Below are positions 1,155 to 22,473 of a stretch of DNA of 64,000 nt, one piece after another. Made by a program: the position numbers and the translations under genes. The notes beneath the pieces were generated by a model. That model saw only the letters and a list, made by a program, of their open reading frames with translations, was not told the origin of the DNA and searched no databases. Source of the stretch: Haliotis rubra (Eukaryota); assembly GCF_003918875.1 (NCBI RefSeq), contig NW_025767541.1, positions 62,001-126,000 on the forward strand, written 5' to 3'. Within the stretch, counting starts at the first letter, position 1, and the number at the start of each line of letters is the position of its first letter.

Positions 1155-1254
1155 NNNNNNNNNNNNNNNNNNNNNNNNNNNNNNNNNNNNNNNNNNNNNN
1201 NNNNNNNNNNNNNNNNNNNNNNNNNNNNNNNNNNNNNNNNNNNNNNNNNNNNNN
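1155..1254. other. Scaffold gap (100 N)
   Basis: Run of exactly 100 Ns. Confidence 0.99.
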
Positions 1255-4200
1255 CCCGGCCGTTTATCAGCCCATTGATAATATGGCTTCGCGTCATCGA
1301 TAATATCATATTCGGGCCAGATACTCGCGATGGGGATTATCACGTCTTTACGTTAGTACGGTTCGTACCGAAATCATGGATCGCCCGGGTTAAGTATGTT
1401 TCCAAACACTCACGGGATGGAGTCATGGCTCAAGTTGCTATCACCAAACACGATAGGTTCGTTGGCAGCAAGTTCGCATCACTCAACATGATGGTTATGG
1501 CCTGCGCCCCACCTAACTACGGGGATAATCGAGCGTCCGCCTGCAACAACAAAACGATGTAGATTACGTACCACCTAAAGCGGCCCGTTAAAGCATATTC
1601 AAACATCAAATGATAATCGATGGCCCGATGCAACACCAAAACACGGATATCGCCGCACCGGGTTGCGATAAAGTTCCGTACAACTCCAGCATTGATGAAT
1701 ATGGTTCGTTACGTTCGCCAACATGGGGATATTACGTCTTGCGGCTGCATCGAAATTCACGGGTAACATTTGCCCGGGTTACATTGCGTTCACCTGAATA
1801 TGATTTAACATGGCCTCGAGCGTACGGGATACAACATGGGTTCGTTGGCATAGTTCGCATCATTCCGTGTTACGGGGATGACGATGGCCCGCCGTACTGA
1901 CCAAACATCGATGGTTCACGGCCTCGGGTTAGTATGTTCGGTACGGTTTCGCCATATAAGTTTACCACCTAACATCATACTATCCGTTATCGATGAAAAT
2001 AGTGGTCAGCATACGTACCCTTAAGCGGGTATCATACGATATTGATATCAGCCGATACCCGGCATAAGCAGCGCACCGAAGCATGATGGACAAACAGAAT
2101 CAGCGTCATTAATCTTCATTTCAGACATTGATACGTAGCAGCCATCAGCGCCCATTTTATCGCATATCAATATGCGGTATGACCGGTCGAATGAACCGTC
2201 AGCATCAACAATCTGTAGAACATCATCATAAAAGTTACACATTTGTTCGCACGTTCACCGTACCAAGACGTAATTGAGCTGCTTCACTTGTTCAGTTCAA
2301 TTGTTGAACAACAACAAAGCTGACCACAGATCTTCAGACAACCAACGTCAGCAGCAGAAGTGCTGAAAACACGTTATGTTCTCAACATTAGATCTGTTAT
2401 ATTGAACAACACTAATCAGCCGGTACGGATTGAATACACTGTAATTGTTTCTATGGCAACCGAGCAGTCATCAATGTTCAGCAATAATAAACACGTAGGT
2501 TAAGGGCAATCCGTTACGAAATCGGTTCGTTGATTTTCATCAGCGTACCAGCTATACATTATCGATCACCAACATTCTGGAATACGCAGGAGTTGAAGAT
2601 TGTTATCGGCGTGGCAGCATTGGGAATATCTAAGTTTGCCTGCGGCTGGGTCGCCCATTACCACGACCCGTCAATGCGTAACGAAGTCTTCGACCAAAAC
2701 CAACATAATGTCATAATAATGCGAAAGTCAATCGATACGTTGGTGAATCTATCAGTTCGCCGGTGAAGCCGCCCAAGAATATTTCAACAATACATCAAAA
2801 TTCAGCCAGGCGAAGTTGGCACGTTACTTGTTTTCACGATCAACCTGAGTGCACGATAATAGCCTTCCTTCATATGGCCTGTTGAAGTATCGAACAGTTT
2901 GATAATCCTCGGCATTTTCGGCATTTATCGTGTCATCACCAGAAGCCGTAGCGATAGCCAGTCAACCGAAAGGTCATTCCCAACCGCCAGTCGAGGAGCG
3001 AGCACGCCATCACACCAGCCAGGTCTCAACAGGACAATCCAGGCGATCAAACCGCCGTAAAACAAAAACACCGACCTTCTGTTTGTTCACCCCAGCCGAC
3101 CCATTGGTGCTTACGTCTGGCGCGTTCAATATATTGTATTACGCTTCGTTCATCCTTCGAGCGTATCTTCCGTGAGCTATCGTAGCAGGAACGTCAGAGA
3201 TAATGTAATATGTACTGCGTTTGTTTGAAAACGCCATAACGCCGCAGACGCAAAGTCAATTTCGACCGTGCCAACGCAAAAAGAAAATGCATCTTCTTCG
3301 TCCTCGAAACAAACGCAAACAGCTGCACAGGGTGATGACCGTACCGGCGAAAGCGTTTTGTTCACGGCAGCGTTTGCGCAGCGACAAGGCGTCGATGTTC
3401 TATCGCGATATCATAAAGCACAATTAAAGCTACAGTGCCCTCGCCATGGAAAACATGAAAGCTTCGATGAAACCTCATGCTCGAATCCGTCAGCCGCGCC
3501 AGCGTTATTGGTGTTCACGTCATTCGCCGTGGTCTCGATTCCATCGTCCCGTTTGCATGCATCCATAACACGTCATTCGCCAAAGGAAGAGGGTACAGTT
3601 CGCATTGGTAATGAATCGTCGCTGAATTTGAAGCCATTCACCACAGGCAGCGCAAAGAATGCGCTTGAATCAAGGCGAAAGTATATGCATGTTATCTTCA
3701 CGGCCGCAATTTCGCAAAGCGTATACCACCCGTTTTGAACTACGAACACAAGCTGTCAATGGCAGCCCCACCTGGTTAGCCATGCCATACGTCATAAATA
3801 CCGCACGCCGAATCGAAAGCATGACCAGTCACCGAAATGTCAGTATACGCAGTGGGCACCATACCGTATCTCGCAAATGTATTACGGCGTATACCCGCTA
3901 CCAGTCCCGCAAATGGCCGTATACGGGCGCATTCATACTGTAGCCCGCAATGCGCCATTACGGCGCATACCTGTTCGTACTTCCGCAACGCCGATTACGG
4001 CGCATGTTCATAATTTCATCCTGCGTACGGCGCGTCTGCTCGTATTGCGCACGTTACACATGGTACCTTGTATCCACGCCGGGTATTGCCGGCGTATACC
4101 ATACTGTATCTGCAATACGGCGGCATCTTCAGTCTCCGCAACGCTGTGGATAACGCGGTATTGTCAAGACCACGTTCTCGTTGCCGGGCAAGCGTTTATA

Positions 4201-7200
4201 ATCATCGTGAAAGCTGCTCCAACCGACCGCAACAGTCAGGTCACGTCCTTACCAGGCCGCAGCATGCCAGTCATGGCAGTCTTTCCCTGAGCCGACAGGT
4301 CATATGAAAGCGCAAAATCAACGGAAACGAAGGTTGAATAGTAGCAGCCGAGCAAAACCAAAACGCATTGAGAACGAATATTTTCGAGCGAAAATGGATT
4401 AAACAATGCCAGCAGTGAAGACACCAGGTACCATTGTTATCAGAAATACCGCCGTAGTCGGCGTCACATCGTCTGCCTCACTCACAATCTTCCGCCAGCC
4501 ATCGCCAGTCTTCGCCTTCAACGGTGCAATACATCAAATCTATCATTTTGCAGAAAGCTCGAAATATCCGCCCTGTACCAATACAGAACCGAAGGTTAGA
4601 CCGATTCAAAAATATGCCAATGCAAAGAGGCCATTGATCGGTGGCATTGCCGACTGCTGACACATCAACGTCTAATGACGATGCTCGCCGCTGATCACCG
4701 GATCGTTCGAACAAACTCTATTACTAGATCAAACGCCACAGGTGGACAGTTGTTGAGCGTGGCGCAAAATAACCACTGACTTCATTGAAGAACAGCCGCG
4801 GTAGCATTGTTCAGTATTTGTTATTGACGGTAAGTGAACAGGCAGCTGACGCGTGCGAATCATTTCCAGTTTACAATCAGTCATACTGGAATCAGCATTG
4901 CGCCTATCGTGCCGTTAATCACAGACTTTCATTCCGATCATTAATATGCCTGAAATCGTGGAATAATGTGCCAGAAATTGCTATCAGTCCTTTGCCATTG
5001 GTGACGGGCCTGCCCATCATCGCGTTCCCGCCCATAATTCATCAACAATCGTTAAACAGTTGCGTATTTTCCAGAGGACGGTCTTCTCTGTGCGCAAGCC
5101 GGTCAAACGGCACAGAATCACTGTTCTCGTTTTCCGTAAACAACATCATTCCGTGTTTCAGACATTTCAACTGAGGAGGAAACCGGTGGCTAAGATCCTG
5201 TTCCGCGGTCTTCGCTCTGACGCCCAGCAGATCTAAAGGAAGATAACTATCGTCTGGACCGGTTACGAAGAACAGCATGAAATACCCCACGCTCTCGCAA
5301 AGACCGCCCGGTGGGGACATGGCAGCACGCCAGATCTGGTTGGTACCATCCACGGCCCTAAAATGATCAAACAAAGTTTCTAATAAATCAGCCACCCGTC
5401 AAGTCCTCACCTGTGATTACGCATTCTCAACTTCGTTTCCAAGTCACGTACATCCAGAAGGTAACGATTCATTCACCAGAATCGCCATAAGCCGAATAGT
5501 CAAATATCCATCAACTGAATCAAAGCTCACCTTTCCGTTTGTTACCAGATTATCGTTAATTTTCGTTCGGTGTTCAATGGGTCATCGCTTCGAAAAGCTT
5601 AACTCAGACAATTTCTATTCAGCCGGATACGCAAACAGTGAAACAGAACAACGATATCATTCATATTGATGTACGGTGCGTTAGCAACGCCAGCTTAAGC
5701 GATCAATATCAACATTCAGTGCCTGGTTGCGTCGACAGCGAAGTGGGGGAAGGTTGTTGAACGTCGTTGTTAACATGGTTACCAGGAATTGCCGCGACAC
5801 TGGTCGTTTATCGGTAATAATGGCAACAATTTATCAGAGGAAAGTTTCATTATGTTCATTACTATACGTCACTGCTTATCATTTCAAACGCTCAATACAG
5901 GGAGACCCACTACGGGTCTTCGACTTCTAGAATGATCATGAAATGGGCGACTGCGTTGCGATTGCCGTTTGCGCAGCCGATCACCAGCTCACGGCAATCG
6001 AGCACACCCGCGATTCAAACCAGTCGCGATCAAATGACTATCCTCGACCAGAAACCGTCACTACGTAACCGAGTATCATCGCACTTCCGGCAAAAACGGA
6101 GACCGGTTATACAAAGCCCATACTCAAACACAGTTGTGGAAATTAAGTATGATGCTTCGATATTAATTTTACTTCGTTATTCGCCGTTATCGATTGTCGT
6201 TTCATAGTCAGCGGTTTGGGGGCGGTTCGTAACCGGCAAATTGACAGCAAATCACGTCTACTCGATAATTTGAAATTCGTTCAGAACTGGTTTTTGCTCC
6301 GACTGGTTTTCACCGCTTTGGCATCGAGGAGTTCCGGCATTGTTAATACTGATTTTAGCGGCGTTGAAAGCTCCACGGTCGTTATTTAGCAGGTAGTCGG
6401 ACAGATCGGATAAGCGTTACCCATTGCGTCACCATTTTCAAATATTTGTTGTCCATCGTTAATTCGTTTACAGCGTATACGGATAATTCAGGGCATTTTG
6501 AAAATGGTTTTCGTAACCACGGCAACACACCAAGACATCTTTCCGCTGAAGAGTATCCGCTTTATTGAGTGCTCTCTGTCATTGTTGACGCAGCTTCTAA
6601 ATATTCACCGTCAAAAATCATCGGTTTATAAGAGCTGTTTCGTCCAGAGATCAAGATTTGAGAAATGCGTTTCGATAAATGTCGACAGTTCTAGATTATC
6701 CGGTTCTTGGTCGTCTCCAAAACATATGCAGCCGATTTTACGAAACATCGTGTCATGGCTTCAAAAATTAATTATATTCGAGTTTCAAGCAAATCGCCCA
6801 TGAGAACGCCTGGCAGCGTAACAAAATCGTATTCGGCTCGTAATTGTTCGGTGTTCGTTTGGTTGTAGTTCGATATCAGCATCAATAACCGTGAATTAAC
6901 CGATTGAAAGCTGCGTTGACACGTAGTCATGTCATACAATAATTGTAGCGTTATTACATGTTTCGACACCAAAACATGATCATCGTCGGCGCCATTTTCA
7001 AAACGCCAATTGATATTCGTCAGCGAAAAGACGGCAGTGAAACATGAAAGTACCGTTGTTCATTTTATGTTGAATATTACCGTCGCCGGATTGCTTATCT
7101 ACCAGTCAAACCATAAACAATCATCTGTTCTTCGCAGTTATCATGGGTTTTATGTTATCGCCAGTACTTGGTCGGGTCGTCAGTGAGCGTATGTTCGGCT

Positions 7201-10200
7201 CAGTTCCCATGCGACGCATATTGAACGCAAATTACTTCGGTACAAATTATTTCATAACAAAAGCGCCAAATGGACATATTTTCTTAGTTAATGATATATT
7301 GTCAGTCTTCGTGTTGACTATCGACAATCTTGTCATCTTCCCATGGGTCTCACCTCTTTAGTTGTCACGATTTCAGTGACAGATGGTGTTCGGTCATGTT
7401 GTCATCATGCAAATGGAACTTACGGTTATACTTCGAATACCAATAATGGCTTATTTAGCCGACTAAGGTCGCATGCTCCCCGAATACTACCTTATCACTT
7501 CGATAACCACTGCACATATGAAAGTTGAACATGCCTCGCCATTAACAGCATCAATTTCGCCTTACGGACTTCGTCCCCGCAAACCCGTGCCAGTAAATCA
7601 CCAGTCAAAAGCAATATTCCCCAAATACCAATATATCTTACTTTGGCCCACCCCATGCATGCATGACGCATCACAACCCGGAAAACCTTCGCAAGCTTCA
7701 CATTTCGGTCAACAAAGATGATTCCGTTTTGAGGAAAATTAATCTCGAAAGAGAAGGAACCGCGAAACAAGAACAAAATTGGCTCAGTTTTCAGCAAGCA
7801 AAAACACCGAATTCAAAAACCGCAACAGGAACAGAAAGTGTTTATATTCAATAATTACGCGCTAAAGCTAAGCAAAAGTACCAAACTAAATATGAATAAA
7901 AGCGATACTGGGGAAGTAGTAATGTCTGAAACAAGATTTCAGCAACAGCAACATCATCAGGTTGAACAGTAGCGTTATCGTTTGATGCCGTTGACTTGCC
8001 AAATCGATAACACTGGCTGCATGGAAGGCCAACAATATTGCCTCATTCACCTAAACGTGCGCCATTGTAGCCCCAAGACTTCATCTCTCGATCGTAGTCA
8101 ATGTACAAGAATGGCTTCAAGAGTTCCTCATAGGCCATGAACATTCGAGATAGCTCGTAGAACTTCAGATTTTGTCAGAATGAGAGATCATGTAGTCTGC
8201 GATGGGCAGGATCATGCGTTGGTTCGCCACACGACTGCCGACGAAGTTAAACCACACAACAACCACATTACCATCAGCTTTCAGCAATACCGAAGCCGTA
8301 ACGAAAGCAGTCTAAGATTTTCAGTGTTCTGACCATTCACTGGGGCTTCTGCCGACGCAGCGATATTTTCTATCAAATTATTTATACCAGAGAACAACCG
8401 CTGTGACGCGCCTGAGGGTTCCGAATGGAATGCGCAGTTTCGATGAGCTTCCTTTACAGAAATGTTCGAAAGTACCCTCGCAAGTTTTTCCCGTATAGTG
8501 ACCATACCATCATTGACACATTGCGCCGTCGCGAGCCACGCCGTGTTGTTTGTGACCGGCAACACGCCACATTGCCGTTTCGTTAACAGCTGACCCATTA
8601 CAACGTTATTATTGGCAGTTTGAGTAAAGTCATGAACTCGAATAGTCATTGTCACCCGTGTGACATCCAGACAGGTACCTCGTTGCGTAACTCATTATCA
8701 TCTCAAGACAGGCACTTCGTTACCCGCTGGTCACTGGCATTGTCACCGTGTGATCCACTAATAACTTCAGACAGGCACTACACGTGCGATCCCATTCGGT
8801 CATCTCGGTATCAGGTACTTCAGCCGTCTTTGCATCCCACCACGACAGGCATTGCCTGCGTGAACATCGTTAAATATCTCGCTATCGCGACTTCACCATC
8901 AACAAATATTCGCGAGTCGCGTACGTTACCGTGTAATCCCGATCAATATCTTCGGTATCAGGCACTTCTCGTCGCCCGTAACTCAATAACTTTATAGGTA
9001 CCGTTACCGTGTAACTCATCATCACTAAGACAGCACTTCGTTACCGTGCATCGACATCCACAAGACGAGGTATTCGCTCCACCGAAATGATTAATATCCA
9101 CAGACAGGCATTGTTACCCGTGCGAATCGATTGTCATCTCAAGACAGATTGTCACCCGTATCAGTCCGATACAGTTCGACCACTAACACCACAGACAGGT
9201 ATCGTCACCGTGCGAACTATTCAATACTAAGACAGTGTATTTTCTACCAGCAGTCCTTGCTCGACGTTCGCGACAGGTAATACCAGCCGTGCGACATCAC
9301 CTGGACTATGATCAAAACGTTGGATATCTGCGTCCCGGGGAATCGTGTCAGTTATGATAGCGTGCCGCAAATCATGTTAACATTTTCCACTTCCTTCTCT
9401 TCAAGAAAAGCAATTCAAATGTCGCTTTTCCTCACGAAGGTTGCAGTTCATAGCCCGTTATTGCCGCAGATACGTGTTGATAGAACAATACAAGGGCCTT
9501 TGTTCTTCGACAACCGTTCTTACCGGATAATACAAGGAAGCCAGCACCACTGCGATGTTGAAGAAATTATTGCCAAAACCATACAGCTGGAATATTGCTG
9601 TTCGTTCACCGGGTAACCGTTGCCGATATTTACCATGCCAAACCTGGTTCACCTCAGATACGGGTACACCAGCTCACCAGCCAGCCTCGCCACATTGCTG
9701 AAATATTGTTGTACCGCGCAACATGCCGCTTTCATTCAGCCTTGCTCACCGAGCCAGTCCGCCGCGATATTGCTGGAATAATAAGCAGCCGGGCGAGTCC
9801 GTCAGTCAGCTCAAGCGGGTAGCCTGGTTAGCAGGCCTGCCAGATGCCAGCGACTGCTGATTCCGACATGGGCATATCGCGAAGCTCATAATCGATTGCT
9901 GGAATATTGCTAAAACAGGCGCAAAACAGCCGATGTAGTTACCGATGCCAGCATGATAACAGCATTATTAATAAGCCGTCAGCAGCCACGCAACATAACA
10001 GCAATATATTTGTCGTTATTCCGTAGAACAGTAGCCGTCAGCAATGAGAAAGTAATATCAGCTTGGCGGTCAATCGGTCAAATCGCGGCGTGGCATGATG
10101 CGCCGCCCCAGCCTGCTGATCTTTATAAAGTGACAGATATTATTTCGAAAAATGTTTATGTCAATACAAATTAAGCTGAATTTTTCAAAAAATATATAAT

Positions 10201-11741
10201 TTTACCGATGGAAGTTAGTGAATTCAAAACAATTTCTCAAATAATTATTATACGTTTGGTTGTAATAGCGCTTTCGTATCGTTGGGGGCTTCCTTATCAT
10301 TTATCAGAATACCCACGCGATCTATCGCGTTCCAGAACTGCGAAAGATGGCCATTTTCGACATTTTAAAGCATTTATTCACGTAATTACGTATTGTATAT
10401 AATATAATACTTTAAGTTTGTCTTGTATCACCGAGATAACATGGTTACTTCGACCAAAATAACAGTTATGTATCCAGGAACAATCCTGTCTAAAGTGGAA
10501 AACAAATTCCAACAGTTCAGATTGCTGGTTTCCCGCAGCAGCCACAGATGACAGTAGTCCTTCTGGTTTCGACCGAACATATTGTTGCCATTGAAGGAAA
10601 CAACTGGTTAGTACGTAAAGTCGTTTTTCTGTTCATTTCGTCGTCATCATTGGCGTTGATTACCGTATTCATCACCAGCCAATCATGGTGTCACCAGTCA
10701 GTGCAGATTGTACAAAGTCAGTTACCACAATCATCGGGTGCCTGAAAGTGCCATTTTAATGGTCGTTTGTCATTAAACAGCCGCCCGTAAAGTCAGTTAT
10801 CACTAAAGTCAGCCGGTGTCGCCGTCGTCACCGGTGTCAATCGCTCAACAAATCATCGTTATTGTCGTCATCAACAGTATCGAAATGAGTGGTTCAAAGC
10901 TCGACGTTGTTGAAGTCAAGCCGTTCGGAAATTTTCTTCATCAGTCGAGGTTCGGCCGGAATTTTTATGGCCGACATTTCGTCAGACGATCATTCCATGA
11001 CCGTCATGTCATATTTAGATTAAGAAAGATGAATGGAAAGCCACGAGTAGCGGGATGGAGTCAACTTTTCGCCAGTGAAGATAGTAATAGACAAACCGGT
11101 TGGTTTGTGTTACGATTGATAGAGCAGAAGAATACGGTTAAAGAAATCAACAAAAGAGTATGTCATTACCGTTTCCAGTTGGTTGAGCAACGGCGGCGTG
11201 ACGATACGCAAGTCGTAATATTCGAAGCCTGATCATCGCGCGATTTTCGACAAAATACAAAGAAATAGTGCGATATTGAGAAGAAAAGAAAGCAGCAATT
11301 AACGAACACGTAAATCACGAGCGGTATTTCCGGTAATGACCGTCACCTTCGTTTCGTAGCATGCAGATCGTGTTACGGTTGCCGTCGCAAACAAGGATTC
11401 CCTTCCTCCATGACAGATACAACGCGACCTTTTGTTGGTTGTTCATTTGAACACGATGCCGTTCCACGTCTGTTACTGGTCATATTCACGTGGATAATAA
11501 AAGTTTAGCAGACCGGGAATTCCAGCGAGCATCGATGAAAATTTATCGCAAGCTAAACCTTCGAATACACTGGTTTGTGCTAAATCGTCATGCTTCAGCT
11601 GTGGTCAAGATTATGATTACGTTTGCACCTCGATGCCGCAGGAATGAACGGTATTGGCGCATCATAAATTGCCGTTGTTTAATACAGTTATTGCAGAACC
11701 GAATTTGAAAATTGAACAACAAGATGCCAATTTTCAATATT
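1255..11741 (-). other. Low-quality inverted copy of about 11908-24900 (fold-back read / assembly artefact)
   Basis: Colinear reverse-complement anchors: 11690-11741 to 11908-11972; 11510-11545 to about 12150-12190; 10742 to 12395-12418; 9760-9960 to the SINEs at 13370-13630; 8650-9290 to the 41-bp array; 8100-8190 to 15760-15860; 6290-6350 to the OSGIN 3' end; 5150-5340 to exon 19295-19486; 3660-4170 to the 42-bp array; 2347-2396 to 23296-23342; 1255-1980 to the 44-bp array. Confidence 0.92.
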
Positions 11742-12215
11742 AGTTATCATCAATTGCTTTGAGCAATGCTTGATAAATGCCAAGAGAATCTGCTCTTTGA
11801 CATGGATTAACTTGACGAAAAATACAAAGATTTTTTTCCTCTGATAGCACATCTGGAGGTAGACAATTTCATTTTCTTGTGTGCTAACATCTGTGGAGCC
11901 GTCACTCAATATTGAAAAGAAATTGGCATCTTTAATCTGTTGTTCAATTTTCAAATTCTCAGTTTCTGCAATAGCTTGTGTAAACGAAGCAGCAGATTTA
12001 TCTGATGCATATGCTTTACCAGTTTCAATTCCTTTTCTGGCATCAAGTTTTCGTTGCCAAACGTAATCCATAAATGGTCTTGAATTTTTAGCTAGGGCAT
12101 GACAGTTGCTAAACAGTGTATTCAGGGTTTTGAAAGCTTTTGCATTCAGTTTTTCCATCGATTGCTCCGCTGGAGATTCCCGAGGTCTCATTTCCTTCGC
12201 TTTGTGAAATTCCAC
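11742..12215 (-). CDS. Central part of the ZNF862-like hAT transposase (DUF4371-like region and first catalytic Asp), truncated on both sides in the assembly
   Basis: ...LNTLFSNCHALAKNSRPFMDYVWQRKLDARKGIETGKAYASDKSAASFTQAIAE...ANFFSILSDGSTDVSTQENEIVY matches the hAT/ZNF862 FSI(L)xDGSTD motif. Same strand as the hATC exon at 206-730. Confidence 0.75.
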
Positions 12216-12254
12216 GGCCCTAGTATGACCAAATGACAGATGATGGGTTTAAAG

Positions 12255-12535
12255 AGACAACTGACACTGATGACTGAGAGTGATGACAATGTGATGGTTG
12301 ACAATGACAGTTGACACAGGGATAATTGACAGTGACAACTGACACTGATGACTGAGAGTGATGCCTGACACAGGCATGACTGACAATGATGACTGACCAT
12401 TAAAAATGGCACTTTCAGACTTACACAGGAATGATTGACAATGATGACTGACTGTCACAATCGACACACTGACAATTGACACCATGATTGACAGTGATGA
12501 ATGCAATTGACAATCAACACTGTGATGACTGACAA
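12255..12535. repeat. Degenerate TGAC/TGACA-rich low-complexity tandem repeat
   Basis: Repeated tgac/tgatgac/caattgac motifs. Confidence 0.7.
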
Positions 12536-13410
12536 GAATAAGGAGATTGAGGATTTCAGCAAGAAACCTATGACATACTACATAGTACTGTAGTTGTTTC
12601 CTTCAATGTAAGCAATACCTCAATGTTCAGACTCAAGTAGAAGTTCTGTCATCTGTCAATACCTTGCAGAATTAACCCATCCCTGAAACTGATAAATTTA
12701 AGGATATTATACTACTCCACTTTAGATTAGGATGTTATAATTCCTGGATACACATAACTGATTGTTACAGGTCAAATGTATATTAACACATATCTCACAA
12801 AACTGATTGTCCCTAAGATAAACTAAGTAATATATTATACTTCTAATACATGAGTACATGAATTCATGTTTTAAAAAAATAATCCAGAAATGTGTCTTCC
12901 ATCTTTCACTAGTTCTGATTGCAATAGATCACGTAGATTTATTCTGATAAATGATGGGAAACTGTGCCGTACAGAAAATATATTACAACCAAACAATATA
13001 TGGAGTGTGGTATTTGAAAGTCACATAAAAATTGCTGAATTTATAACTTCCATGGTAAATTATATATTTTTTTATTAAAAAAATAATAATTTAGCCAATG
13101 ACATAAAAAACATTTTTCAAATGAAAAATATCTGTCACTTTTATAAAAGTCAAGCAGGCTGGGGACGAGCAACAAAGATACATCATGCCACACTTATATT
13201 GATTTATCCGACAGGTGGTTATTGATGACCATAAGCTGACAGCAAATATTATTACTTTCCTCATTGCTGACGCTACGGTAGTGTTTCTACAGAGTCACGC
13301 TTGACAAAATATGTGCTGATTGTGTTGCCGTAACAGCCAATCAACTGGCAACCTGTTATGAATACACTGGTATCATGCTGTATCAACCAGCTACAGCACT
13401 GAGATCAAAC

Positions 13411-13950
13411 TGTTTTACGCCTCTTTTAGCAATATTCCAGCAATATCACGGCAGGGGACACCAGAAATGGGCTTCACACATTGTACCCATGTCAGGAATC
13501 GAACCCGGGTCTTTGGCATCACAAGCGAATGCCTTAACCACCAGGCTACCCCACCGCCCCTGAGATCAAAGACTGACTGAGTTTGGTTTCACGCCGCTTT
13601 TAGCAATATTCCAGCAATATCACGGCGGGGGACTGAGATCAAAGAAATGATTGAGCAAAGACTGAATAAGTAACATGTTACGCAGGTTTTAACAATATTC
13701 CAGCAATATTTTAGCAGAGGAGTAACAATTGGGCTTCACAAATTGTACCCATCTGGGGAATTGAACCAAGGTTTTCAGCATGACAAATATGCGCTTTAAC
13801 CACTTGGTTACCCCAGTGCTCCGATGGAGTGAGAGAGAATATGGTTTTATGCCACTTTTAGCAATATTCCAGCAATATGATGTGGGGGACAGCAGAAATG
13901 GGCTCTTCAGCATCACGAGTGGATGCTTTAACCATATGGCTATCCGACTG
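13411..13950 (-). mobile_element. Cluster of four tRNA-derived SINE family A copies (13411-13560 full; 13571-13632, about 13686-13818 and about 13828-13950 partial or degenerate)
   Basis: Minus-strand head GGGGCGGTGGGGTAGCCTGGTGGTTAAGGC...GACCCGGGTTCGATTCC (pol III A/B boxes, tRNA-Asp-like). Tail GCTGGAATATTGCTAAAAGCGGCGTAAAAC. Confidence 0.88.
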
Positions 13951-14280
13951 AGCTAAGACAGCAGTTTGGTCAGAGAACTCATGTTGCCCCTTCATGTAAT
14001 GATTACATTCCTGGGCCTCTATCCATACATATCTGCAGCAATACAACCTTGAACTATGAACTGTACTGGGGTCCCCAGCCTTTCTAATGATGCAACAGCA
14101 TAGTAAAAAGCAGTATTTGAGATTACTTTCTTAATGTTGGGCATAAGGAGAGTGGAAAATGATGACACATGATGGCCACAATCCAGTGCAGTTGCACTGA
14201 AAGCATATCATAACTGACAAGTTGAGTCTCCCCAGGACAAGATCACTCCAACATTCAAAGAGGGAACAATTATAATTATG

Positions 14281-15166
14281 ATTAGTGGGTTCACACAGGT
14301 AACAATTACCTGTCTGGGGACATCAGTGGGTTTGCACAGGTAACAAATACCTGTCTGGGGATATTAGTGGGTTCACACAGGTGACAAATACCTGTCTGTG
14401 GATATTAGTGGGTTCAGACAGGTAACAAATGCCTATCTGGGGATATTAGTGGGTTCACACAGGTGACAAATACCTGTCTGGGGATATTAATCAGTTCACA
14501 CAGGTAACAAATACCTGTCTGTGGATATTAATCGGTTCAGACAGGCAACAAATACCTGTCTGTGGATATTAATCGGTCCACACAGGTAACAAGTACCTGT
14601 CTGGGGATATTAGTGGGATTACACAGGTAACAAGTACCTGTCTGGGGATATTAGTGGGATTACACAGGTAACAAGTACCTGTCTGAGGATATTAGTGGGA
14701 TTACACAGGTAACAATTACCTGTCTGAGGATATTTGTGTGTTCACACAGGTGACAAGTCCCTGTCTGGGGATATTTGTGTGTTCACACAGGTAACAAGTA
14801 CCTGTCTGGGGATATTAGTGGGATTACACAGGTAACAATTACCTGTCTGAGGATATTTGTGTGTTCACACAGGTGACAAGTCCCTGTCTGGGGATATTTG
14901 TGTGTTCACACAGGTGACAAGTACCTGTCTGGGGATATTAGTGGGATCACACAGGTAACAAGTACCTGTCTGGGGATATTAGTGGGATCACACAGGTAAC
15001 AAGTACCTGTCTGGGGATATTAGTGGGATCACACAGGTGACAAGTACCTGTCTGGGGATATTAGTGGGATCACACAGGTAACAAGTACCTGTCTGGGGAT
15101 ATTAGTGGGATTACACAGGTAACAAGTACCTGTCTGGGGATATTAGTGGGATCACACAGGTGACAA
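14281..15166. repeat. 41-bp minisatellite, about 21 copies
   Basis: Unit gggatattagtgggatcacacaggtaacaagtacctgtctg. Internal 7-bp dyad ACAGGTA/TACCTGT. Confidence 0.95.
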
Positions 15167-15796
15167 GCGGAGAAACATTCCAGAGTTCATGACTGCCAAA
15201 CTCGTTACCAACATAAATAGCATTATGAAAAATGGGTCCAGCAATCACATTTCCACCCCAACAAAGACAACAATGTATCTGTTTCGGTTGTTTTATTTCA
15301 CCAGTCCCAGTAACAGTGGTCCCCAAACAAGGCCTGACGTAATGCACGACTGGCCCTTGTGGTAATCAATGATGAACATGAGACTTCCTCTCCTACAGGA
15401 AAAAACACAGGGAACACTCCTGAACACATACATTTCTGTAAAACTCATCAAGCTTGCACATTCCATTCAGAACCCTCAGATGTCCCTGTAGACTAACGGT
15501 TAGTCTCTGAATAAATAATTTGATAGAAACTAAAAAAATCCTTTTAAATTAAACAGAAGCCCCATTGAGATGGGAGATTCAGAACCTGAGGACATCTAGA
15601 CTTGCTTCATTTACAGCTTCAGTATTGCAGAAAGGGTTGGGCGGATGAGAAAGTAATGTGGTTGAGGGACTGTGAGACAGACTAAGGTCCCTGTAACCAG
15701 TCATTAAGATGTAGCAGACCAACACACATGATTACACCACAAACACATCACCCAAGATTTATGATCACCATCATTCTGACAAATCTGAAGTTCTAC

Positions 15797-15919
15797 AGGC
15801 TAGCTATTCTCGAAATGTTCGTAGCCCTATGAACTTCTTAAGCCCATTCTTAACACATTGGTTACAATCAAAGTTAAGAATTCTTAGGGCTACAAACGTT
15901 TCGTGAATAAGGGCCCAGC
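15797..15919. mobile_element. Palindromic MITE
   Basis: Imperfect inverted arms tattctcgaaatgttcgtagccctatgaacttcttaa / ttaagaattcttagggctacaaacgtttcgtgaata. Confidence 0.7.
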
Positions 15920-17832
15920 TCTGTATTTAGTGACTAGCTCCCATACAGCCAAATGTTATGTTCAACAAAGTCAACAGCACCTACTTCAAGCAATGTCTAA
16001 ACTTGATAATGACGCTACTGATTTCAACTGAGATTTCTATTGATATTGCTGTTAGGATTCTGAAATCTTGACAAGGTAACAATTATATTTCCCAACTATA
16101 CTTTATTCTTCATATTTAGTTTGAATTACTTTGCCCAAAAGAAAAATAACATTTAACGCATGGTGGTAGATAAACATACTCTGTTCCTGTTTAAACGGTT
16201 TTCAAGTTGGTTCAGTTAATCTATGTTTTTTGCCGTATTTTTTCAAGATTAATTTTCCCCACTCAAAAAACAAAATCCTAATGCTTTTATTGGCCAAAAA
16301 TGTAAACTTACAGAAAAAGTTTTTTTCAGATTGTCTTTTGCCCCATATACACTTCATAAATTGACAAAAGTAAAATACTGTGAGTATTTAGAAGGAATAT
16401 TACTTTGACTAGTGATTCCCCCCCATCCCCCCACCCCCACGCCTTTAGGTTTTCTGAGGGCAAAAAATCCATAAAACAAGAAATTAAATTGGTCTGGCCT
16501 AATGAATGAAAAACGGGCATGTTTCAACTTTCATATCGTACAGTGGTTATCAAGTGTCAGTAAGTATTCAGGGTATCGACCTCATATTGGTCCAGCTAAA
16601 CTGCAGTCAGCAGGTTCATCGCCATTATTGGTAGGTATTCAAGTGTAGCCATGGTTACAGTTTGCAATGATGAGTAACATGGTAACAGACTGCACCATCT
16701 GTCACTATGAAGTCAGAGACAACTCTGGGAGCGGGATTATAGGAGATGACAAGACAGTATCGACTGTAAGTCAACACAGAAGACTATTTCAAGTAAACTG
16801 CTATCAACAACCTAAGAAATATATCCATTTGGCACTTTGTTAGAATCCTTAAAATAATTTGTACAGAAGTTGAAAATTTGCGTTCCAATACCAGTACAGT
16901 CACATAGGGCAAAATTACAGACCAATACATACTGACATTATTCCAAAGTAAAAACATTAACATAAAAACTATATTTTATTCTTACGAAGAGCAAATTGAT
17001 GATTATGGTTTGGCCAATGTGTCGTCATATTAGCAGCAGTATCTTGGGAAATATTATAAATGAATACAAACTATTACCTTCATGTTTCCTGCCAGTACTT
17101 TCACTGACAGAAAATAACACCCGGTATTAGTCATATTTTAGTGTCAAACATGTATGCTATTATACAAGTGTATATGACATGACCTACATTAAATACAAAT
17201 CCAATACCTTCAATAAGTTTATTAATTCTGAATTGTGAAGCAGCTGCTCTCCAGATTGCCCCAATAATCCACTGAGCCCTACAACCAAACAATGAACCTG
17301 AACAATATAAGCCAGATACATTTTGTTACACTGCCAAACATTCTGACTCATAAGACTTCCAATTTGCCCAAAGCTGTGACTATAATTAATTTTTAAACCA
17401 CTATTTTGTGTTTCATAAAATCAATACATATGTTTTGGAGACATTAAAATTGAATAATGTTCAGGGAATTGACGAATTTATCAGAAACACATTTCTCAAA
17501 TCTGGATCTCTGGACCTGATTAGTATCTTATAAACACCAAGTAGTTTTTGACAGTGACAATCTTTAGAAATACATCCAACAAATGACAGAAACTCAATGA
17601 AATATGAAATTCTCATATTCCAGCAGGAGATTAATAAATAGTGTGTTACCATGGTTACAGAAACCATTTTCAAAATGCCCTGAATTATCCATGCCATTTT
17701 CATCGCACAAATTAATAAACAAAGATTAACGATTAATCATGGACAAACAAAATATTTAAGAAAATAAGTGACACAATGCAACAACACTATCCAGTCTGTC
17801 CAGCCTGTAAAAATATAACAACCATTCGTCAG

Positions 17833-18938
17833 TTACACACTTTCTGCTTTTCGCCACTTCCGTAAGTAGTTAACAATGCCCAGAGCTCCTCCGATGCCAA
17901 AACGGACAAAGTTGTCACTGACCAGAGGTCCGAGGGCAAAAAGCCCTGGTTCATAGACGGATTCGTATGTGAAGGGGTTAATCTGAAATGGGTTGTGTTT
18001 ACTGTCAATTTGCCAGTTTTGAACCACCCCCAAATTGCGCCCTCCGTTTGGCAAGAATGACAGGTCTGACCTCGACCCAATCATTACAACAACAATCGAG
18101 GTATCAAACGAGGAAATCGTGTCACCCTGTACTGACTGTATCAGAACTTTCTTGTCATACTTAATTTCCACAACCTTGTGTTTGGAATATGGTTTGTATA
18201 ACTCAGTCTCTGTTTTGCCACGCATCATGGAGTGCACACGGTGATACTCAGGATACATGGGCACCGGCAGTTTCCTGAAGATCAGAGACGGATCATTCGG
18301 TCCACGACGGAACACATGAATCACCGGGATATTGTACTCAGTTGCCATGAGAATAGTGTCCGCTGCACTTAAACCGGCACCAATCACCAACACAGGGTCA
18401 CACGATCCAGTCAGTTCCCCTGATTTCATGATCTTCTCGAAGTCTGGTAGGGAATGGACCACATGGGGCAAGGTCTCCCCTGTAATTGCAAGACGGTTTG
18501 GAATGTCGTATGTCCCAGTGGCCAGTATCACGTAATGAGACACAAAGCAAAACTCCTCCCTGATCGTGTTGCCATTGTCGAAGTCACAGTCTTCAGCAAT
18601 TAGTCTGTAGCCTCGAACCTCCCACAAGTAACCATGATTCTTCTTGACGTTCTTACAACACGGTTCCACCTCCCCACTCTCACTGTCGGCACAGGCTCGA
18701 ACCTGGAACACCTTCTGAACAGATGTTACAGTGTGATAGTCATAGAAATGGCGTTGCAGATTCTTTTCCTTCACGAACCGGAGTAATAATCTTTCACGTC
18801 TCCGACCGTGGCTCTCCCTGAGTGATTACCCGTATGTATAGATGAACTCTTGCGATTGGCCAGCCACTCTCGGAAGGGAACTGTGGGTAACTCCATCCAG
18901 TTGTTCTGGCTCACTGTTTGCATGCTGCCATCCATTCG
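17833..18938 (-). CDS. OSGIN: OSGIN1/2-like gene, last coding exon (FAD/NAD(P)-binding oxidoreductase fold); apparent 1-bp deletion near 18782
   Basis: Acceptor tctatcctccag. RMDGSMQTVSQNNWMELP...RATVGDVKDYY, then one base off, RFVKEKNL...VILATGTYDIPNRL..DPVLVIGAGLSAAD..YPEYHRVHSMM..GLFALGPLVSDNFVRFGIGGAL. These are the characteristic OSGIN motifs. Stop TAA at 17833-17835. Confidence 0.93.
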
Positions 18939-19294
18939 CTGGAGGATAGAAATTATCTGAGTTAAAACTTTTCAAACATTTCAATGACACTCATTGAACA
19001 CAAGGCAGAAAAATTCTAATAACAAACAGAAGAGTGAAACTGGTCTGTTATCTTAACAAGTTAGTTAGTTCTTCAACGTCGGACTCAGCAGTATTTCAGC
19101 TATATGGCTGATTCACAAGTTAGTGAATAATATCATTATCTTCTGGATGTACATGACTTAAACAAGTTAAAGAATGCATATCCACAAATTGAGGACTTGA
19201 CAGATTAACTATGGTTACAATAGAAACTGTTTGATCCTAAAATTTTTGGAATATTATACATGGATGAATTTTTTTATAATAGATCTAAGCGTAC

Positions 19295-19486
19295 CTGCCA
19301 TGATCCCCCTGGACGGGTCTTGCCGAGAACTGCATGGGGTATTTCATACTGTTCTTCATGCTTCCAGTCCAAGACAGTGGAGTTATCTGCCCCTAGATCT
19401 GCTTCTGGGTGAGACAGGGCATCAAAGAGTAAGGCCACTGGGTTAGGGGATCTGCCCTCGAGACCCTCAGACAGAAACTCCAGGTC
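19295..19486 (-). CDS. OSGIN: OSGIN-like coding exon 3 (192 nt, phase 0/0)
   Basis: ttcag|DLEFLSEGLEGRSPNPVALLFDALSHPEADLG...IPHAVLGKTRPGGSWQ|gtacgc, a highly conserved OSGIN block. Confidence 0.95.
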
Positions 19487-19914
19487 CTGAAACACACAGA
19501 ATGATGATAACACAGAAAAAATAAAGAGCAAGTGATTCTGTGCCATTTGACTGAAACTATACCAACACACCCTAAAAAAGATGATGCCTACAAATACACA
19601 ACTGTTTCTTGATTGGTTGATGAGATTATGGGCAGGGCTTTGATGAGAGAATGGGCAGGGCTTGATTTGCATCACCGTGCTAAAGGATGTCACAGATTTC
19701 ACAACATTGTCTACAGTTTGGGCATATTAATGATCAAATGAAAAGTCTGTGAAGTTATTAGCTTTGATAAATCTATAAGTACTGATTTCCAGTACGACTG
19801 CAGTTGTAAACTGGAAAAATGATGCACACACTTTTGTAAATCCAGCACACAGATATTCACCTCGTCAATGCTTAAATATACAAGAGCAATACTACCACAG
19901 CTGTTGTAATTGAG

Positions 19915-20159
19915 TGAGTGAGTGAGTTTAGTTTTACACCACACTCAGCAATATTCTACCTGTATGGCGACAGTCTATAAATAATCAAGTTTGGACCAGA
20001 CGATCCAGTGATCAACAGCATGAGCATCGATCCGCGCAATTGGGAACCGATGACATGTGTCAACCAAGTCAGCGGGCCTGACCACCCGATCCCATTAGTC
20101 GCCTCTTACGACAAGCATGGGTTACTGAAGATCAATTCTACCCCAGATCTTCACGGGTT
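19915..20159 (-). mobile_element. SINE family B, full length, 14-bp TSD
   Basis: TSD ctgttgtaattgag at 19901-19914 and 20160-20173. Non-tRNA head AACCCGTGAAGATC...GTCGTAAGAGGCGACTAA. (ACTC)n tail. Confidence 0.9.
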
Positions 20160-20194
20160 CTGTTGTAATTGAGCCTAGAGACGAGCCACTATAC

Positions 20195-20329
20195 CTGATC
20201 TACAATGGAGATGTCCTTAGCTTTCTGAAGCTTTCTGGTAAGAATGTCATTTGGATGTATTGCACCGTTGAAGAAAGGCCGGTTCCCCCGAGAGCATGAA
20301 GGACAGACTGATGGCTGACGGGCCATTTC
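20195..20329 (-). CDS. OSGIN: OSGIN-like coding exon 2 (phase 1/0); one extra G in a G5 run at 20285-20289
   Basis: ttcag|(G)NGPSAISLSFMLSG / NRPFFNGAIHPNDILTRKLQKAKDISIVDQ|gtatag. Contains the GxGPS dinucleotide-binding motif. Length is 135 nt where 134 is needed. Confidence 0.9.
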
Positions 20330-20642
20330 CTGAAAGAAAGAAAAGATTATGAGTGAAACCATACACTGATGTGAGCACCAACTACGACGAGCCATGTGAT
20401 TCTGATGCTGTGAACAAACACCTGAATGTCTCCTGCACGTGTTCTGATCCTTGCTTACTCTTTCCAGTAAACACTTCCACATACATAATCCCATTTTCAC
20501 TCAAAATATTCATTCTCACTTGCATTTTTTTAGTTTTTTGCTTCAGCTGCTGCACATATTCCAACCTTCATTTTCGTTGGAATTTTTTCCACTTTCTGAC
20601 GCGGTTATATAATATCAGCTCAAAGGGAAAAAGACACCACCA

Positions 20643-22190
20643 GTGACTAAGCATAAAGTGAGGATGCAACCTGAGTAGGACATGACCTGACATTGTTGCA
20701 GTCAGTTGAATTTAACTCTGACTATGGTCTCAACCTTGTCCAGCACAGCAGGGCAACAAGTGCCAACTAAATACCACGTATACAGCATTGCAAGGATACA
20801 AGTATAAGGTATACACCATGTATACAGCATTGCAAGGATACAAGTATAAGGTATACACTATGTATACAGCATTGCAAGGATACAAGTATAAGGTATACAA
20901 CATTTCAAGGAAACTAGTGCAAGGTATACACCATGTATACAGCATTGCAAGGATACAAGTATAAGGTATACACCATGTATACAGCATTGCAAGGATACAA
21001 GTATAAGGTATACACCATGTATACAGCATTGCAAGGATACAAGTATAAGGTATACACCATGTATACAGCATTGCAAGGATACAAGTATAAGGTATACACC
21101 ATGTATACAGCATTGCAAGGATACAAGTATAAGGTATACACCATGTATACAACATTGCAAGGATACAAGTATAAGGTATACACCATGTATACAGCATTTC
21201 AAGGATACAAGTATAAGGTATACACTATGTATACAGCATTTCAAGGATACAAGAGTATAAGGTATGCACTATGTATACAGCATTTCAAGGATACAAGTAT
21301 AAGGTATACACCATGTATACAGCATTGCAAGGATACAAGTATAAGGTATACACCATGTATACAACATTGCAAGGATACAAGTATAAGGTATACACCATGT
21401 ATACAGCATTGCAAGGATACAAGTATAAGGTATACACCACGTATACAACATTTCAAGGAAACTAGTGCACATATATGCACGTGACAATTCACATTCAGCA
21501 TTACCGAGTGGCCCCTAGAACAACCATATAGAGCATGGCCTTTATAGGTGGGGAATATATACCAGTAACACGCCTATGTTCATAGTTCTAAAAAACAGGT
21601 GGAGTATACACTTGACAAAAACACGGCCATGGAAATAAACATCTCCTTATGAATTCCTCTCTCATATGACTAAGCACATTTTTGCACAGCATTCTTGCAC
21701 TACCTGTAGTGAATAACTAGAACATTCTTGATGACTCAGTACAAATACAACCGAACACATTTACATCCACCCTCCTTCCCTTTAACCCGAGATAACCAAT
21801 GTTCGCCGTGCATCATTAAACAGGACACTGCGATACGTCAGACCACAGCAGATGACGAGTGGTACCAAATGTATAGCGCAACTGAATGAGCGTTCCAGTG
21901 GATGGGTTTCATCAAAGCTCATGTTTTTTTCCCATAGCAGGGCCTCTGACCTATAAAGCTAAGTATGTACTTTTATGATATCACATGCAGATATCAACCT
22001 GCCTTGTCATACTATAGAACACTGCCATGATTAAAAACACTTACTCACATGCCAATTACAGACCATGCAATTCCATGTACAGCTATTTCAAATGACATTT
22101 GTTTCAAGGACAAAGAAAGATGGTAAATTTACATTTTTTCATTTTTGCATTGCTGAGTCAGAATGACTTGCATCTGCAGCGTTACTCAGC
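20643..22190. promoter_or_regulatory. Cluster of antioxidant response elements (Nrf2/CncC-sMaf type) in an OSGIN intron
   Basis: GTGACTAAGCA 20643-20653, ATGACTAAGCA 21666-21676, TGCTGAGTCA 22151-22160, and near-matches ATGACTCAGTA 21731 and TTACTCAGC 22182. Confidence 0.6.
20777..21462. repeat. 42-bp minisatellite, about 16 copies
   Basis: Unit tatacagcattgcaaggatacaagtataaggtatacaccatg. Contains the GTATACA-cca-TGTATAC dyad. Confidence 0.95.
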
Positions 22191-22473
22191 GTTCCACTCA
22201 ACCCTGTAAGGTCATTAAACACACCCCAAAGTTACATGTCGGGTAATCAAGCATGTATCTCTGTCATTCACTCACTACAATTACTTCCACAAGGAAAGGA
22301 GATACCTTCCACAGGGATGGGCATCTCAAACTTTATATGTCTATTATTGAAACCTCTGCACCAACTAGCCAGGCAATACTTTCTTGTCATTGTTATATCA
22401 GCTAGGGTGGAGACAAAAATTAGAAAAAGACAAATACACTTGTTTAGGTCAATGTTTTTTTGTTTGGCAGTTT

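What the first reader, a model, noticed from the sequence alone, without database searches (positions are those of the whole stretch)
1255..11741. The 10.5-kb 'foreign-looking' block is a garbled mirror image of the next 13 kb (fold-back read artefact)
Seen: at least 11 colinear reverse-complement anchors, covering OSGIN exons, SINEs, a MITE and all three minisatellites. The copy is compressed to roughly three-quarters length by pervasive 1-5 bp deletions and collapsed homopolymers. It visibly gains CpG, degrades uniformly across exons, young SINEs and satellites, and ends at the N-gap. The turn is at 11741/11908, leaving a loop of about 165 bp. Inference: an unpolished template-complement nanopore-type chimera at a contig end. 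A real old duplication in a methylated animal genome should lose CpG and would not garble satellite units this way. It matters because it mimics bacterial HGT or a novel ORF cluster and creates a false OSGIN paralog.
Basis: partly seen in the sequence, partly recalled or inferred. Interest (0 to 1): 0.7.

Follow-up and report, generated by a model that had tools for sequence, protein, structure and literature searches.

The report
Garbled fold-back read at contig end
The 10.5-kb "foreign-looking", CpG-rich block is not real genome sequence; it is the badly mis-read second strand of one nanopore fold-back read left unpolished at a contig end, and it creates a false copy of an OSGIN-like gene.

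Summary

**The mirror.** Window 1255-11752 is a colinear reverse complement of 11890-24695. The alignment score is 3107, against 2-13 for controls.

**The damage.**
- Per good-arm base there are 62% matches, 10% substitutions, 28% deletions and 6% insertions.
- It is uniform across a coding exon, SINEs, three minisatellites and unique DNA.
- It is strand-asymmetric in every 2-kb bin (A>G 466 against T>C 87).
- CpG rises from 163 to 665, which is 13 SD above what context-free noise would give.

**Relative-rate test.** The turn lies inside a young hAT-like transposon whose copies are 96-99.5% alike. The good-arm copy is 98.6% identical to the family. The mirrored copy is 68.5% identical. So all the "divergence" sits in one arm.

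**Independent reads.** Contigs from four public runs tile the good arm with no differences, at single-copy depth. No long contig lies on the block, and many bins there have zero depth.

**Source of the artefact.** The assembly's size and record count match the published blacklip abalone nanopore assembly. That assembly included five 2D hairpin libraries base-called as 1D. Shortening and mis-calling of the second arm of an inverted repeat is a published nanopore behaviour.

**Verdict.** This is a technical artefact of low scientific interest. It is useful only as an assembly-quality flag.

The parts
1155..1254 (.). 100-N scaffold gap that bounds the block. Left untouched.
   Evidence: It is the only N run in the window and in 276 kb of the scaffold. 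In the matching published assembly, transcript-guided scaffolding made 292 joins and added 29,200 bp, which is 100 N per join.
1255..11752 (.). Garbled reverse-complement copy of 11890-24695. Read as the mis-base-called second pass of a fold-back nanopore read, not real genome sequence.
   Evidence: It shares no 31-mer with the good arm. The 10 longest ORFs have no Pfam hit.
1255..1975 (.). Garbled image of the 44-bp minisatellite (good arm 23868-24695). The block ends inside this array.
   Evidence: for the mapping. TRF finds no array here.
3824..4176 (.). Garbled image of the 42-bp minisatellite (20773-21466), at half length.
5684..6370 (+). False paralog: garbled image of the OSGIN-like Pyr_redox exon. 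299 of 942 bases are deleted and 44 inserted, so no frame survives.
8647..9297 (.). Garbled image of the 41-bp minisatellite (14281-15167).
10909..11741 (-). Garbled image of a hAT-like transposon (family positions 1154-2135 of L002). It includes about 680 bp that the good arm lacks.
   Evidence: 68.5% identity over 998 columns. About 70% identity to 7 other genomic copies.
11753..11889 (+). Unmirrored 'loop': high-quality transposon sequence where accurate sequence begins.
   Evidence: 98.6% identity to L002:1001-1495 starting exactly at 11753. Contigs of three runs begin their match at 11753. Local alignment.
11890..24695 (+). Good arm: the real locus from which the block is mirrored.
   Evidence: Contigs with 0 differences at 12253-13440 and 13853-14377, at single-copy depth. 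Alignment.
11753..12250 (+). Fragment of a young hAT-like DNA transposon, with its transposase remnant on the minus strand. The contig break and the turn lie inside it.
   Evidence: Weak, sub-threshold Pfam matches (DUF4371, zf-C17orf113) in family copy L002.
17833..18774 (-). Real terminal coding exon of the OSGIN-like gene (313-aa ORF with a Pyr_redox_3 domain).
   Evidence: Pfam PF13738, E 5.3e-13.

Best explanation
The block is a sequencing and assembly artefact.

One nanopore read ran leftwards along the real locus, from at least 24,695 to about 11,753, and reached the end of the DNA molecule inside a transposon. It then carried on along the complementary strand of the same molecule. The two strands were joined either by the hairpin adaptor of a 2D (LSK208) library that was base-called as one 1D read, or by spontaneous follow-on of the complement.

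As the second strand passes the pore it can pair with the first. It then moves too fast and is under-sampled. The base-caller skips about 28% of bases, miscalls about 10%, and falls into systematic biases such as CA called as CG. The first half of the read overlapped other reads and was corrected. The second half was too garbled to be recognised as the same locus, so it hung off the contig as 10.5 kb of apparently unique sequence.

No long or short read could map to it, since it shares no 31-mer with the good arm. Racon and Pilon therefore left it as it was. Transcript-guided scaffolding then placed a 100-N join beside it.

Shown here: the mirror, the error profile, the relative-rate asymmetry, the lack of independent contig support and the single-copy depth. 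Inferred: that a single read is responsible, the read's direction, and whether the join was a hairpin or spontaneous.
For: - Colinear reverse-complement alignment, score 3107 against 2-13 in controls.
- Deletion-dominated errors: 28% deletions, 9.7% substitutions, 5.9% insertions. Aligned length ratio 0.78.
- Uniform damage in exon, SINE, satellite and unique DNA.
- Strand-asymmetric A>G, 3.4- to 8.7-fold over T>C in most 2-kb bins and 3-fold in the last, partial one. 31% of CpA is called as CpG, against 3.5% for the complementary TpG change.
- 665 CpG observed, against 411 +/- 19 under context-free noise at the same rates.
- Young transposon: 98.6% identity in the good arm against 68.5% in the block, with family copies 96-99.5% alike. 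SINEs: 82-90% against almost no match.
- Minisatellites are no longer tandem in the block.
- The only other match of the block in the 1.38-Gb assembly is the good arm.
- Four runs: good-arm contigs show 0 differences. Depth in X1 is 148-162, against 122-171 for unrelated contigs. No listed contig piece lies on the block, and at 80% likeness several of its bins have zero depth in all four runs and others in most of them.
- G000 has 1,378,282,171 bases in 2,855 records. The published Haliotis rubra assembly has 1,378,265,264 bp in 2,854 scaffolds. It was built from LSK108 plus five LSK208 nanopore libraries with Albacore 2.3.3, wtdbg, DBG2OLC, Racon and Pilon (PMC6774278).
- LSK208 is the 2D kit with a hairpin adaptor that joins the two strands (PMC7982845).
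- The second arm of an inverted repeat is low-quality, miscalled and shorter in nanopore reads (PMC7229812).
- Fold-back artefacts are typically 1-4% of nanopore genomic reads (PMC12870357).
Against: - Only contigs, not raw reads, could be laid. The tool warns that a hole in contigs proves nothing.
- The identification of the assembly rests on matching totals. The difference is 16,907 bp and 1 record, which I take from my own knowledge to be a mitochondrial genome.
- About 137-165 bp at the turn have no mirror image, and no adaptor or hairpin sequence was looked for. The exact join is therefore unexplained.
- The block holds about 680 bp of transposon that the polished arm lacks. So the read's molecule and the consensus differ there (allele, second individual, or an error in the polished arm).
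- About 59% identity is low even for a poor read. It needs the special second-arm effect.
Confidence: 0.9

Rival explanations
1. A real inverted duplication (palindrome) exists in the animal. Its arms are nearly identical and were collapsed by the assembler. Only a junction-crossing nanopore read shows the left arm, and that read is garbled because real inverted repeats also spoil the second arm.
For: Spealman et al. saw the same garbling at real inverted duplications. Garbling alone therefore does not separate a real fold-back from an artificial one. The short-read junction could hide among the many transposon copies.
Against: - Good-arm contigs sit at the same depth as unrelated contigs in three runs, not at twice that depth.
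- Reads crossing a real junction from the other side, and reads lying wholly within the left arm, would have given a clean left arm.
- The one-stranded error spectrum along all 10.5 kb fits one read or one read direction.
- The turn is at a contig end inside a repeat, next to a scaffold gap.
- Fold-back artefacts are common, and the source data include hairpin libraries.
Confidence: 0.04
2. A physical snap-back chimera was made in the tube. The 3' end of a fragment folded back and was extended during end repair or nick repair, and the resulting hairpin molecule was then read normally.
For: It would also give one molecule with both strands in series and a loop of about 140-165 nt. A perfect 10-nt palindrome, TCAATATTGA, lies at 11906-11915, close to the turn. 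Such palindromes occur about once per 870 bases here.
Against: The mirror seems to run past the palindrome to about 11890, so the palindrome is not the pivot. No amplification step is described for the libraries. This is still an artefact and changes nothing for the genome.
Confidence: 0.04
3. An old, diverged inverted paralogous segment (with a true second OSGIN-like gene or pseudogene), or foreign or bacterial DNA.
For: CpG o/e of 1.2-1.46 and GC of 40-50% differ from the neighbourhood. There are several ORFs of 100-156 aa.
Against: - The block is colinear with host introns, SINEs and satellites.
- A transposon 98.6% identical to its family in one arm is 68.5% identical in the other.
- The exon is no better kept than the introns.
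- Satellite arrays are destroyed rather than homogenised.
- The strand-asymmetric spectrum cannot come from neutral evolution of duplex DNA.
- No Pfam family is found in the 10 longest ORFs.
- No contig support.
Confidence: 0.01

Closest known systems
Fold-back (duplicated-inversion) read artefacts in long-read data (Heinz, Meyerson & Li 2026, PMC12870357)
   Same: One read maps half to one strand and half to the same place on the other strand, as a near-concatenation of forward and reverse strands. This is common in nanopore genomic DNA.
   Different: Here the artefact is fixed in a public assembly as 10.5 kb of contig sequence, not seen as a split read against a reference. About 137-165 bp at the turn are unmirrored.
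Sequencing failure on the second arm of inverted duplicates in nanopores (Spealman, Burrell & Gresham 2020, PMC7229812)
   Same: A good first arm is followed by a low-quality second arm with miscalled and missed bases. The second arm is consistently somewhat shorter than the first. Here the length ratio is 0.78-0.82 with 28% deletions.
   Different: That study concerned real inverted duplications. Current traces and phred scores cannot be seen here. The strong CA>CG bias is not described in the part of the paper I read.
Nanopore 2D reads (hairpin adaptor, kit SQK-LSK208)
   Same: Template and complement are covalently joined and read in series. Five such libraries went into the matching assembly and were base-called with Albacore 2.3.3 to fastq.
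   Different: Whether this particular read came from an LSK208 library, and whether the hairpin adaptor sequence lies at the turn, was not tested.
Palindromic chimeras after whole-genome amplification (Pacasus, bioRxiv 10.1101/173872)
   Same: Artificial palindromic long reads.
   Different: No amplification is described for these libraries. Such chimeras do not by themselves explain a garbled second half.

Membership tests
Nanopore fold-back (template-complement) read artefact | Two halves map colinearly to the same locus on opposite strands and meet at one turn | tested here: met
   The turn is at 11741-11752 / 11890-11908.
Nanopore fold-back (template-complement) read artefact | The second half is miscalled, deletion-rich and shorter than the first | tested here: met
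   28% deletions, 9.7% substitutions, 5.9% insertions. Length ratio 0.78.
Nanopore fold-back (template-complement) read artefact | Errors bear the mark of one strand read once (strand-asymmetric spectrum, no consensus improvement) | tested here: met
   A>G exceeds T>C 3- to 8.7-fold in every 2-kb bin. The longest exact run is 30 nt.
Nanopore fold-back (template-complement) read artefact | No independent reads support the second arm or the junction | tested here: inconclusive
   Contigs of four runs (two samples, one study) give no long piece on the block, and many bins are zero at 80% likeness. The good arm is tiled without differences. Contigs show presence, not absence, and raw reads were not available.
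Nanopore fold-back (template-complement) read artefact | The real locus is single-copy | tested here: met
   - X1: 148 and 162, against 122-171 for unrelated contigs.
- X3: 5.1-6.2, against 4.4-8.3.
- X4: 5.9, against 4.2-7.6 (all).
- The only match of the block in the assembly is the good arm.
Nanopore fold-back (template-complement) read artefact | The assembly was built from nanopore reads | tested here: met
   The totals of G000 match PMC6774278 to within 16,907 bp and 1 record. For the methods. The identification is by totals only.
Nanopore fold-back (template-complement) read artefact | Adaptor or hairpin sequence, a phred drop and a current uplift at the turn in the raw read | not testable with these tools
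   No raw long reads or signal files are at hand.
Real inverted segmental duplication or palindrome | Both arms diverge at like rates from shared older repeats | tested here: not met
   98.6% against 68.5% for the same transposon insertion. SINEs.
Real inverted segmental duplication or palindrome | Doubled read depth if the arms are collapsed, or independent support for both arms | tested here: not met
   Single-copy depth and no contigs on the block, with the caveat that these are contigs.
Horizontally acquired or contaminant bacterial DNA | Coding density with recognisable protein families, and no homology to host non-coding DNA | tested here: not met
   None of 10 ORFs has a Pfam hit. The block mirrors host introns, SINEs and satellites.

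The most novel reading that the evidence does not exclude
The fold-back is a real DNA molecule from the animal: a somatic, heterozygous or extrachromosomal inverted duplication whose turn lies inside a recently active hAT-like transposon. It would have been caught by a single nanopore read and garbled only because real inverted repeats are also misread.
Probability: 0.04. Interest if true: 0.4.

Novelty: not a real feature. Interest (0 to 1): 0.12.

Why it matters
This has practical value only.

- The 10.5-kb block should be masked or removed from the scaffold (scaffold positions 63,255-73,752).
- It imitates foreign, CpG-rich DNA with ORFs of up to 156 aa, and it carries a false, frame-shattered copy of an OSGIN-like exon. 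Both could mislead gene prediction, HGT screens, duplication counts and methylation or CpG analyses.
- The case gives a simple recipe for finding such blocks in older nanopore assemblies. Look at contig ends for CpG o/e above 1.2, a strongly one-sided A>G spectrum and a deletion-rich reverse-complement match to the adjacent sequence.
- The source data probably included hairpin (2D) libraries base-called as 1D, so more such ends may exist in this assembly. In the 276 kb of this scaffold that I could read, there was only this one.

Tried and rejected
1. My first global alignment with free end gaps mis-set the first 560 nt near the turn. The block holds about 680 bp of extra transposon there. I re-aligned in two pieces.

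2. I asked whether the contig left of the N-gap carries the missing left part of the transposon, which would show the true neighbour. It does not within 8 kb; there are only SINE matches.

3. I asked whether the turn sits exactly on the 10-nt palindrome at 11906-11915. The mirror seems to run about 16 nt past it, so I make nothing of it.

4. Homopolymer-specific collapse is not supported.

5. I checked other CpG-rich stretches of the scaffold (130-145 kb) as possible further artefacts. They have no mirror partner, only SINE hits, so they are probably natural unmethylated DNA.

7. Earlier notes of the scan near this place concern other things and did not bear on this report.

8. I did not test whether the block's dinucleotide pattern resembles a base-caller's training genomes.

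The N-gap was not filled or looked up.
Full report
**1. The observation**

The window has one N run, 1155-1254. Straight after it comes a 10.5-kb stretch whose CpG observed/expected ratio is 1.18-1.46. The next 14 kb have 0.15-0.5. GC is also higher, at 40-50%.

BLAST of the block against the window gives eight colinear minus-strand matches. They run from 2342-11741 onto 23347-11908 at 61-86% identity, with E-values down to 1e-122. A global alignment of the reverse complement of 1255-10908 with 12251-25200 scores 3107. Reversed, shuffled and non-complemented controls score 4, 2 and 13. The alignment ends at 1255 <-> 24695, so the mirror reaches the N-gap.

A local alignment suggests the garbled copy continues for 11 more letters, to 11752 <-> about 11890. 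Accurate sequence starts at 11753.

**2. The kind of damage**

Per base of the good arm there are 62% matches, 9.7% substitutions and 28.3% deletions, plus 5.9% insertions. There are 1,083 deletion events, mostly of 1-5 bases, against 399 insertion events. The aligned block is 9,654 nt for 12,444 nt of good arm, a ratio of 0.78.

The damage is even along the block and across sequence classes:

| Class | Bases matching |
|---|---|
| Terminal coding exon of the OSGIN-like gene (17833-18774, minus strand; Pfam Pyr_redox_3, E 5e-13) | 60% |
| 41-bp minisatellite | 60% |
| 44-bp minisatellite | 62% |
| 42-bp minisatellite (half of it is missing) | 43% |
| SINE | 61% |
| Unique DNA | 61-68% |

Tandem Repeats Finder sees the three arrays in the good arm. 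It sees nothing of them in the block, even at score 30.

Homopolymers are not hit much harder than single bases: retention is 0.66-0.72 against 0.74.

**3. A one-stranded error spectrum and the CpG gain**

In good-arm orientation, A>G makes up 466 of 1,209 substitutions. The complementary T>C has only 87. The imbalance holds in every 2-kb bin: 3.4- to 8.7-fold in most, and 3-fold in the last, partial one.

A>G hits 31% of A's that follow C. As a result 213 CpA became CpG, while only 21 TpG became CpG. Further CpGs arise where a deletion brings C and G together (146) or where a base was inserted (115).

CpG rises from 163 to 665. When the same base-wise rates are applied without context, 300 simulations give 411 +/- 19 and never more than 456. 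So there is a systematic bias towards calling CG. Neutral evolution of double-stranded DNA cannot give a spectrum that differs between complementary changes. A single strand read once can.

**4. Relative-rate tests**

The turn lies in a transposon.
- Window 11753-12250 is 98.6% identical to positions 1001-1495 of another genomic copy (L002).
- The block's 11741-10909 matches positions 1154-2135 of that copy at 68.5%.
- Seven other copies in the assembly are 95.7-99.5% identical to each other over 2.2 kb, and each is about 70% identical to the block's version.

Both arms contain the same insertion, so any duplication would be younger than that insertion, meaning a few per cent of divergence at most. 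All the difference lies in one arm.

SINEs tell the same story. Good-arm copies are 82-90% identical to other copies in the window. Their images in the block find almost nothing.

The transposon looks hAT-like. Its ORFs give weak, sub-threshold Pfam matches to DUF4371 and a C17orf113-type zinc finger.

**5. Independent sequence data**

Four public runs (two samples, one study) hold 34-41% of the sampled words of 8800-14700. That is what the good half alone would give.

Laid on that stretch at 80% likeness, their contigs tile the good arm without a single difference. Examples are X1 at 12253-13440 and 13853-14377, and X2 at 12334-13440.

No listed contig piece lies on the block. Bins 8800-8996, 9194-9390, 10573-10966 and 11164-11360 have zero depth in all four runs, and 8997-9193 has zero depth in three of them. 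The depth that does appear in the block sits on the images of the very abundant SINE and of the transposon.

Good-arm contigs have the same depth as unrelated contigs that touch the stretch only through the SINE:

| Run | Good-arm contigs | Unrelated contigs |
|---|---|---|
| X1 | 148 and 162 | 122-171 |
| X3 | 5.1-6.2 | 4.4-8.3 |
| X4 | 5.9 | 4.2-7.6 |

So the locus is single-copy, not a collapsed pair of arms. The caveat, stated by the tool, is that these are contigs. They show presence well and absence poorly.

Within the assembly, the only other match of block 5000-9000 is the good arm itself. Block and good arm share no 31-mer. This explains why neither long-read nor short-read polishing could touch the block.

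**6. Where the assembly comes from**

G000 has 1,378,282,171 bases in 2,855 records. The published blacklip abalone (Haliotis rubra) assembly has 1,378,265,264 bp in 2,854 scaffolds (PMC6774278). The difference is one record of 16,907 bp, which from my own knowledge is the size of an abalone mitochondrial genome. The two samples and one study fit the paper's two animals.

The paper's methods:
- 14 LSK108 and five 'obsolete' LSK208 nanopore libraries.
- Base-calling with Albacore 2.3.3, and trimming with Porechop.
- Assembly with wtdbg and DBG2OLC.
- Two rounds of Racon and one of Pilon.
- Merging with QuickMerge.
- Transcript-guided scaffolding, then haplotig purging.

The scaffolding step made 292 joins and added 29,200 bp, which is 100 N per join. 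That matches the gap at 1155-1254.

LSK208 is the '2D' kit, whose hairpin adaptor physically joins template and complement (PMC7982845). A 2D molecule base-called as one 1D read is by construction a fold-back read. That this particular read came from such a library is inference. Spontaneous follow-on of the complement would look the same.

**7. Mechanism**

Spealman et al. (PMC7229812) showed what happens to nanopore reads that cross an inverted duplicate. Quality is normal on the first arm. On the second arm phred scores are low and bases are miscalled and missed. Current is raised and there are fewer samples per base. The length of the bad region tracks the preceding good region (rho 0.93) but is consistently shorter. 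No base-caller they tried could rescue it. They attribute this to secondary structure speeding up translocation.

The block fits: deletion-rich, 0.78-0.82 of the length, and garbled from the turn to its end.

Fold-back artefacts are reported at typically 1-4% of nanopore genomic reads (PMC12870357).

The likely course of events is this. The read's first half overlapped other reads and was corrected into the contig. Its second half was unrecognisable and extended the contig end, which lay in a repeat where the assembly broke anyway. Polishing had nothing to map there. Scaffolding then joined the contig to its neighbour.

**8. Rivals**

- **Real palindrome collapsed by the assembler.** This would also give a garbled second arm. 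It predicts doubled depth and clean reads from the other direction. Depth is single-copy and the error spectrum is one-stranded throughout. I give it 4%.
- **Snap-back chimera made during library preparation.** This is still an artefact. The nearby 10-nt palindrome at 11906-11915 is not the pivot. I give it 4%.
- **Old paralog or bacterial DNA.** This is excluded by the relative-rate tests, the colinearity with host non-coding DNA and the lack of any Pfam family in the ten longest ORFs.

**9. What remains unexplained**

First, 137-165 bp at the turn have no image in the block, and I could not look for adaptor sequence.

Second, the block carries about 680 bp of the transposon (family positions about 1496-2176) that the polished arm lacks at 12250/12253. 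In all four runs the listed contig pieces also stop at 12250 and restart at 12253 or later, and a transposon contig runs on past 12250. So here the garbled copy may be truer in structure than the polished arm. That shows the block is an independent reading of a real molecule, not a copy made by software. The cause may be an allele, the second animal, or a local mis-assembly.

**10. Verdict**

This is a known kind of technical artefact fixed in a public assembly. It is not a biological feature. Interest is low, and the value lies in flagging the block and the false exon copy.

Noticed in passing
window 12250-12253: The polished 'good' arm jumps from transposon family position about 1495 straight into flanking DNA. 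It lacks about 680 bp that the garbled block and all other family copies have. The listed contig pieces of all four public runs stop at 12250 and restart at 12253 or 12334. This is a probable local mis-assembly or a deletion allele.
   Followed up: partly
window 11753-12250; L002-L008: A young hAT-like DNA transposon family with at least 8 copies that are 95.7-99.5% identical over 2.2 kb or more. A 4.4-kb contig in run X1 has about 5.7x the unique depth. ORFs give weak, sub-threshold Pfam matches to DUF4371 and a C17orf113-type zinc finger. It may have been active recently.
   Followed up: partly
window 13331-13921: A SINE with an enormous word depth in the public runs, up to 3.7e7 summed in X1. 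It must be one of the most abundant repeats of this genome. Loose ends show a GAGT microsatellite head and a tRNA-like part.
   Followed up: no
L024 5001-8000 and L025 1001-9000 (scaffold 131-134, 137-140 and 142-145 kb): Stretches with CpG o/e of 1.1-1.68 and no reverse-complement partner nearby, only SINE matches. They are probably natural unmethylated CpG-rich DNA. A high CpG ratio alone does not mark an artefact in this genome.
   Followed up: partly
window 11906-11915: A perfect 10-nt palindrome, TCAATATTGA, lies within a few bases of where BLAST ends the mirror. Such palindromes occur about once per 870 bases here. The mirror seems to run past it, so this is probably coincidence.
   Followed up: partly
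window 12334-14364: Run X2 (118 million letters of contigs, with very uneven contig depths) covers this stretch downstream of the OSGIN-like stop codon without differences. If X2 is the RNA library of the second animal, this would be a long 3' UTR or unspliced RNA, and it might explain the transcript-guided join at the N-gap.
   Followed up: no
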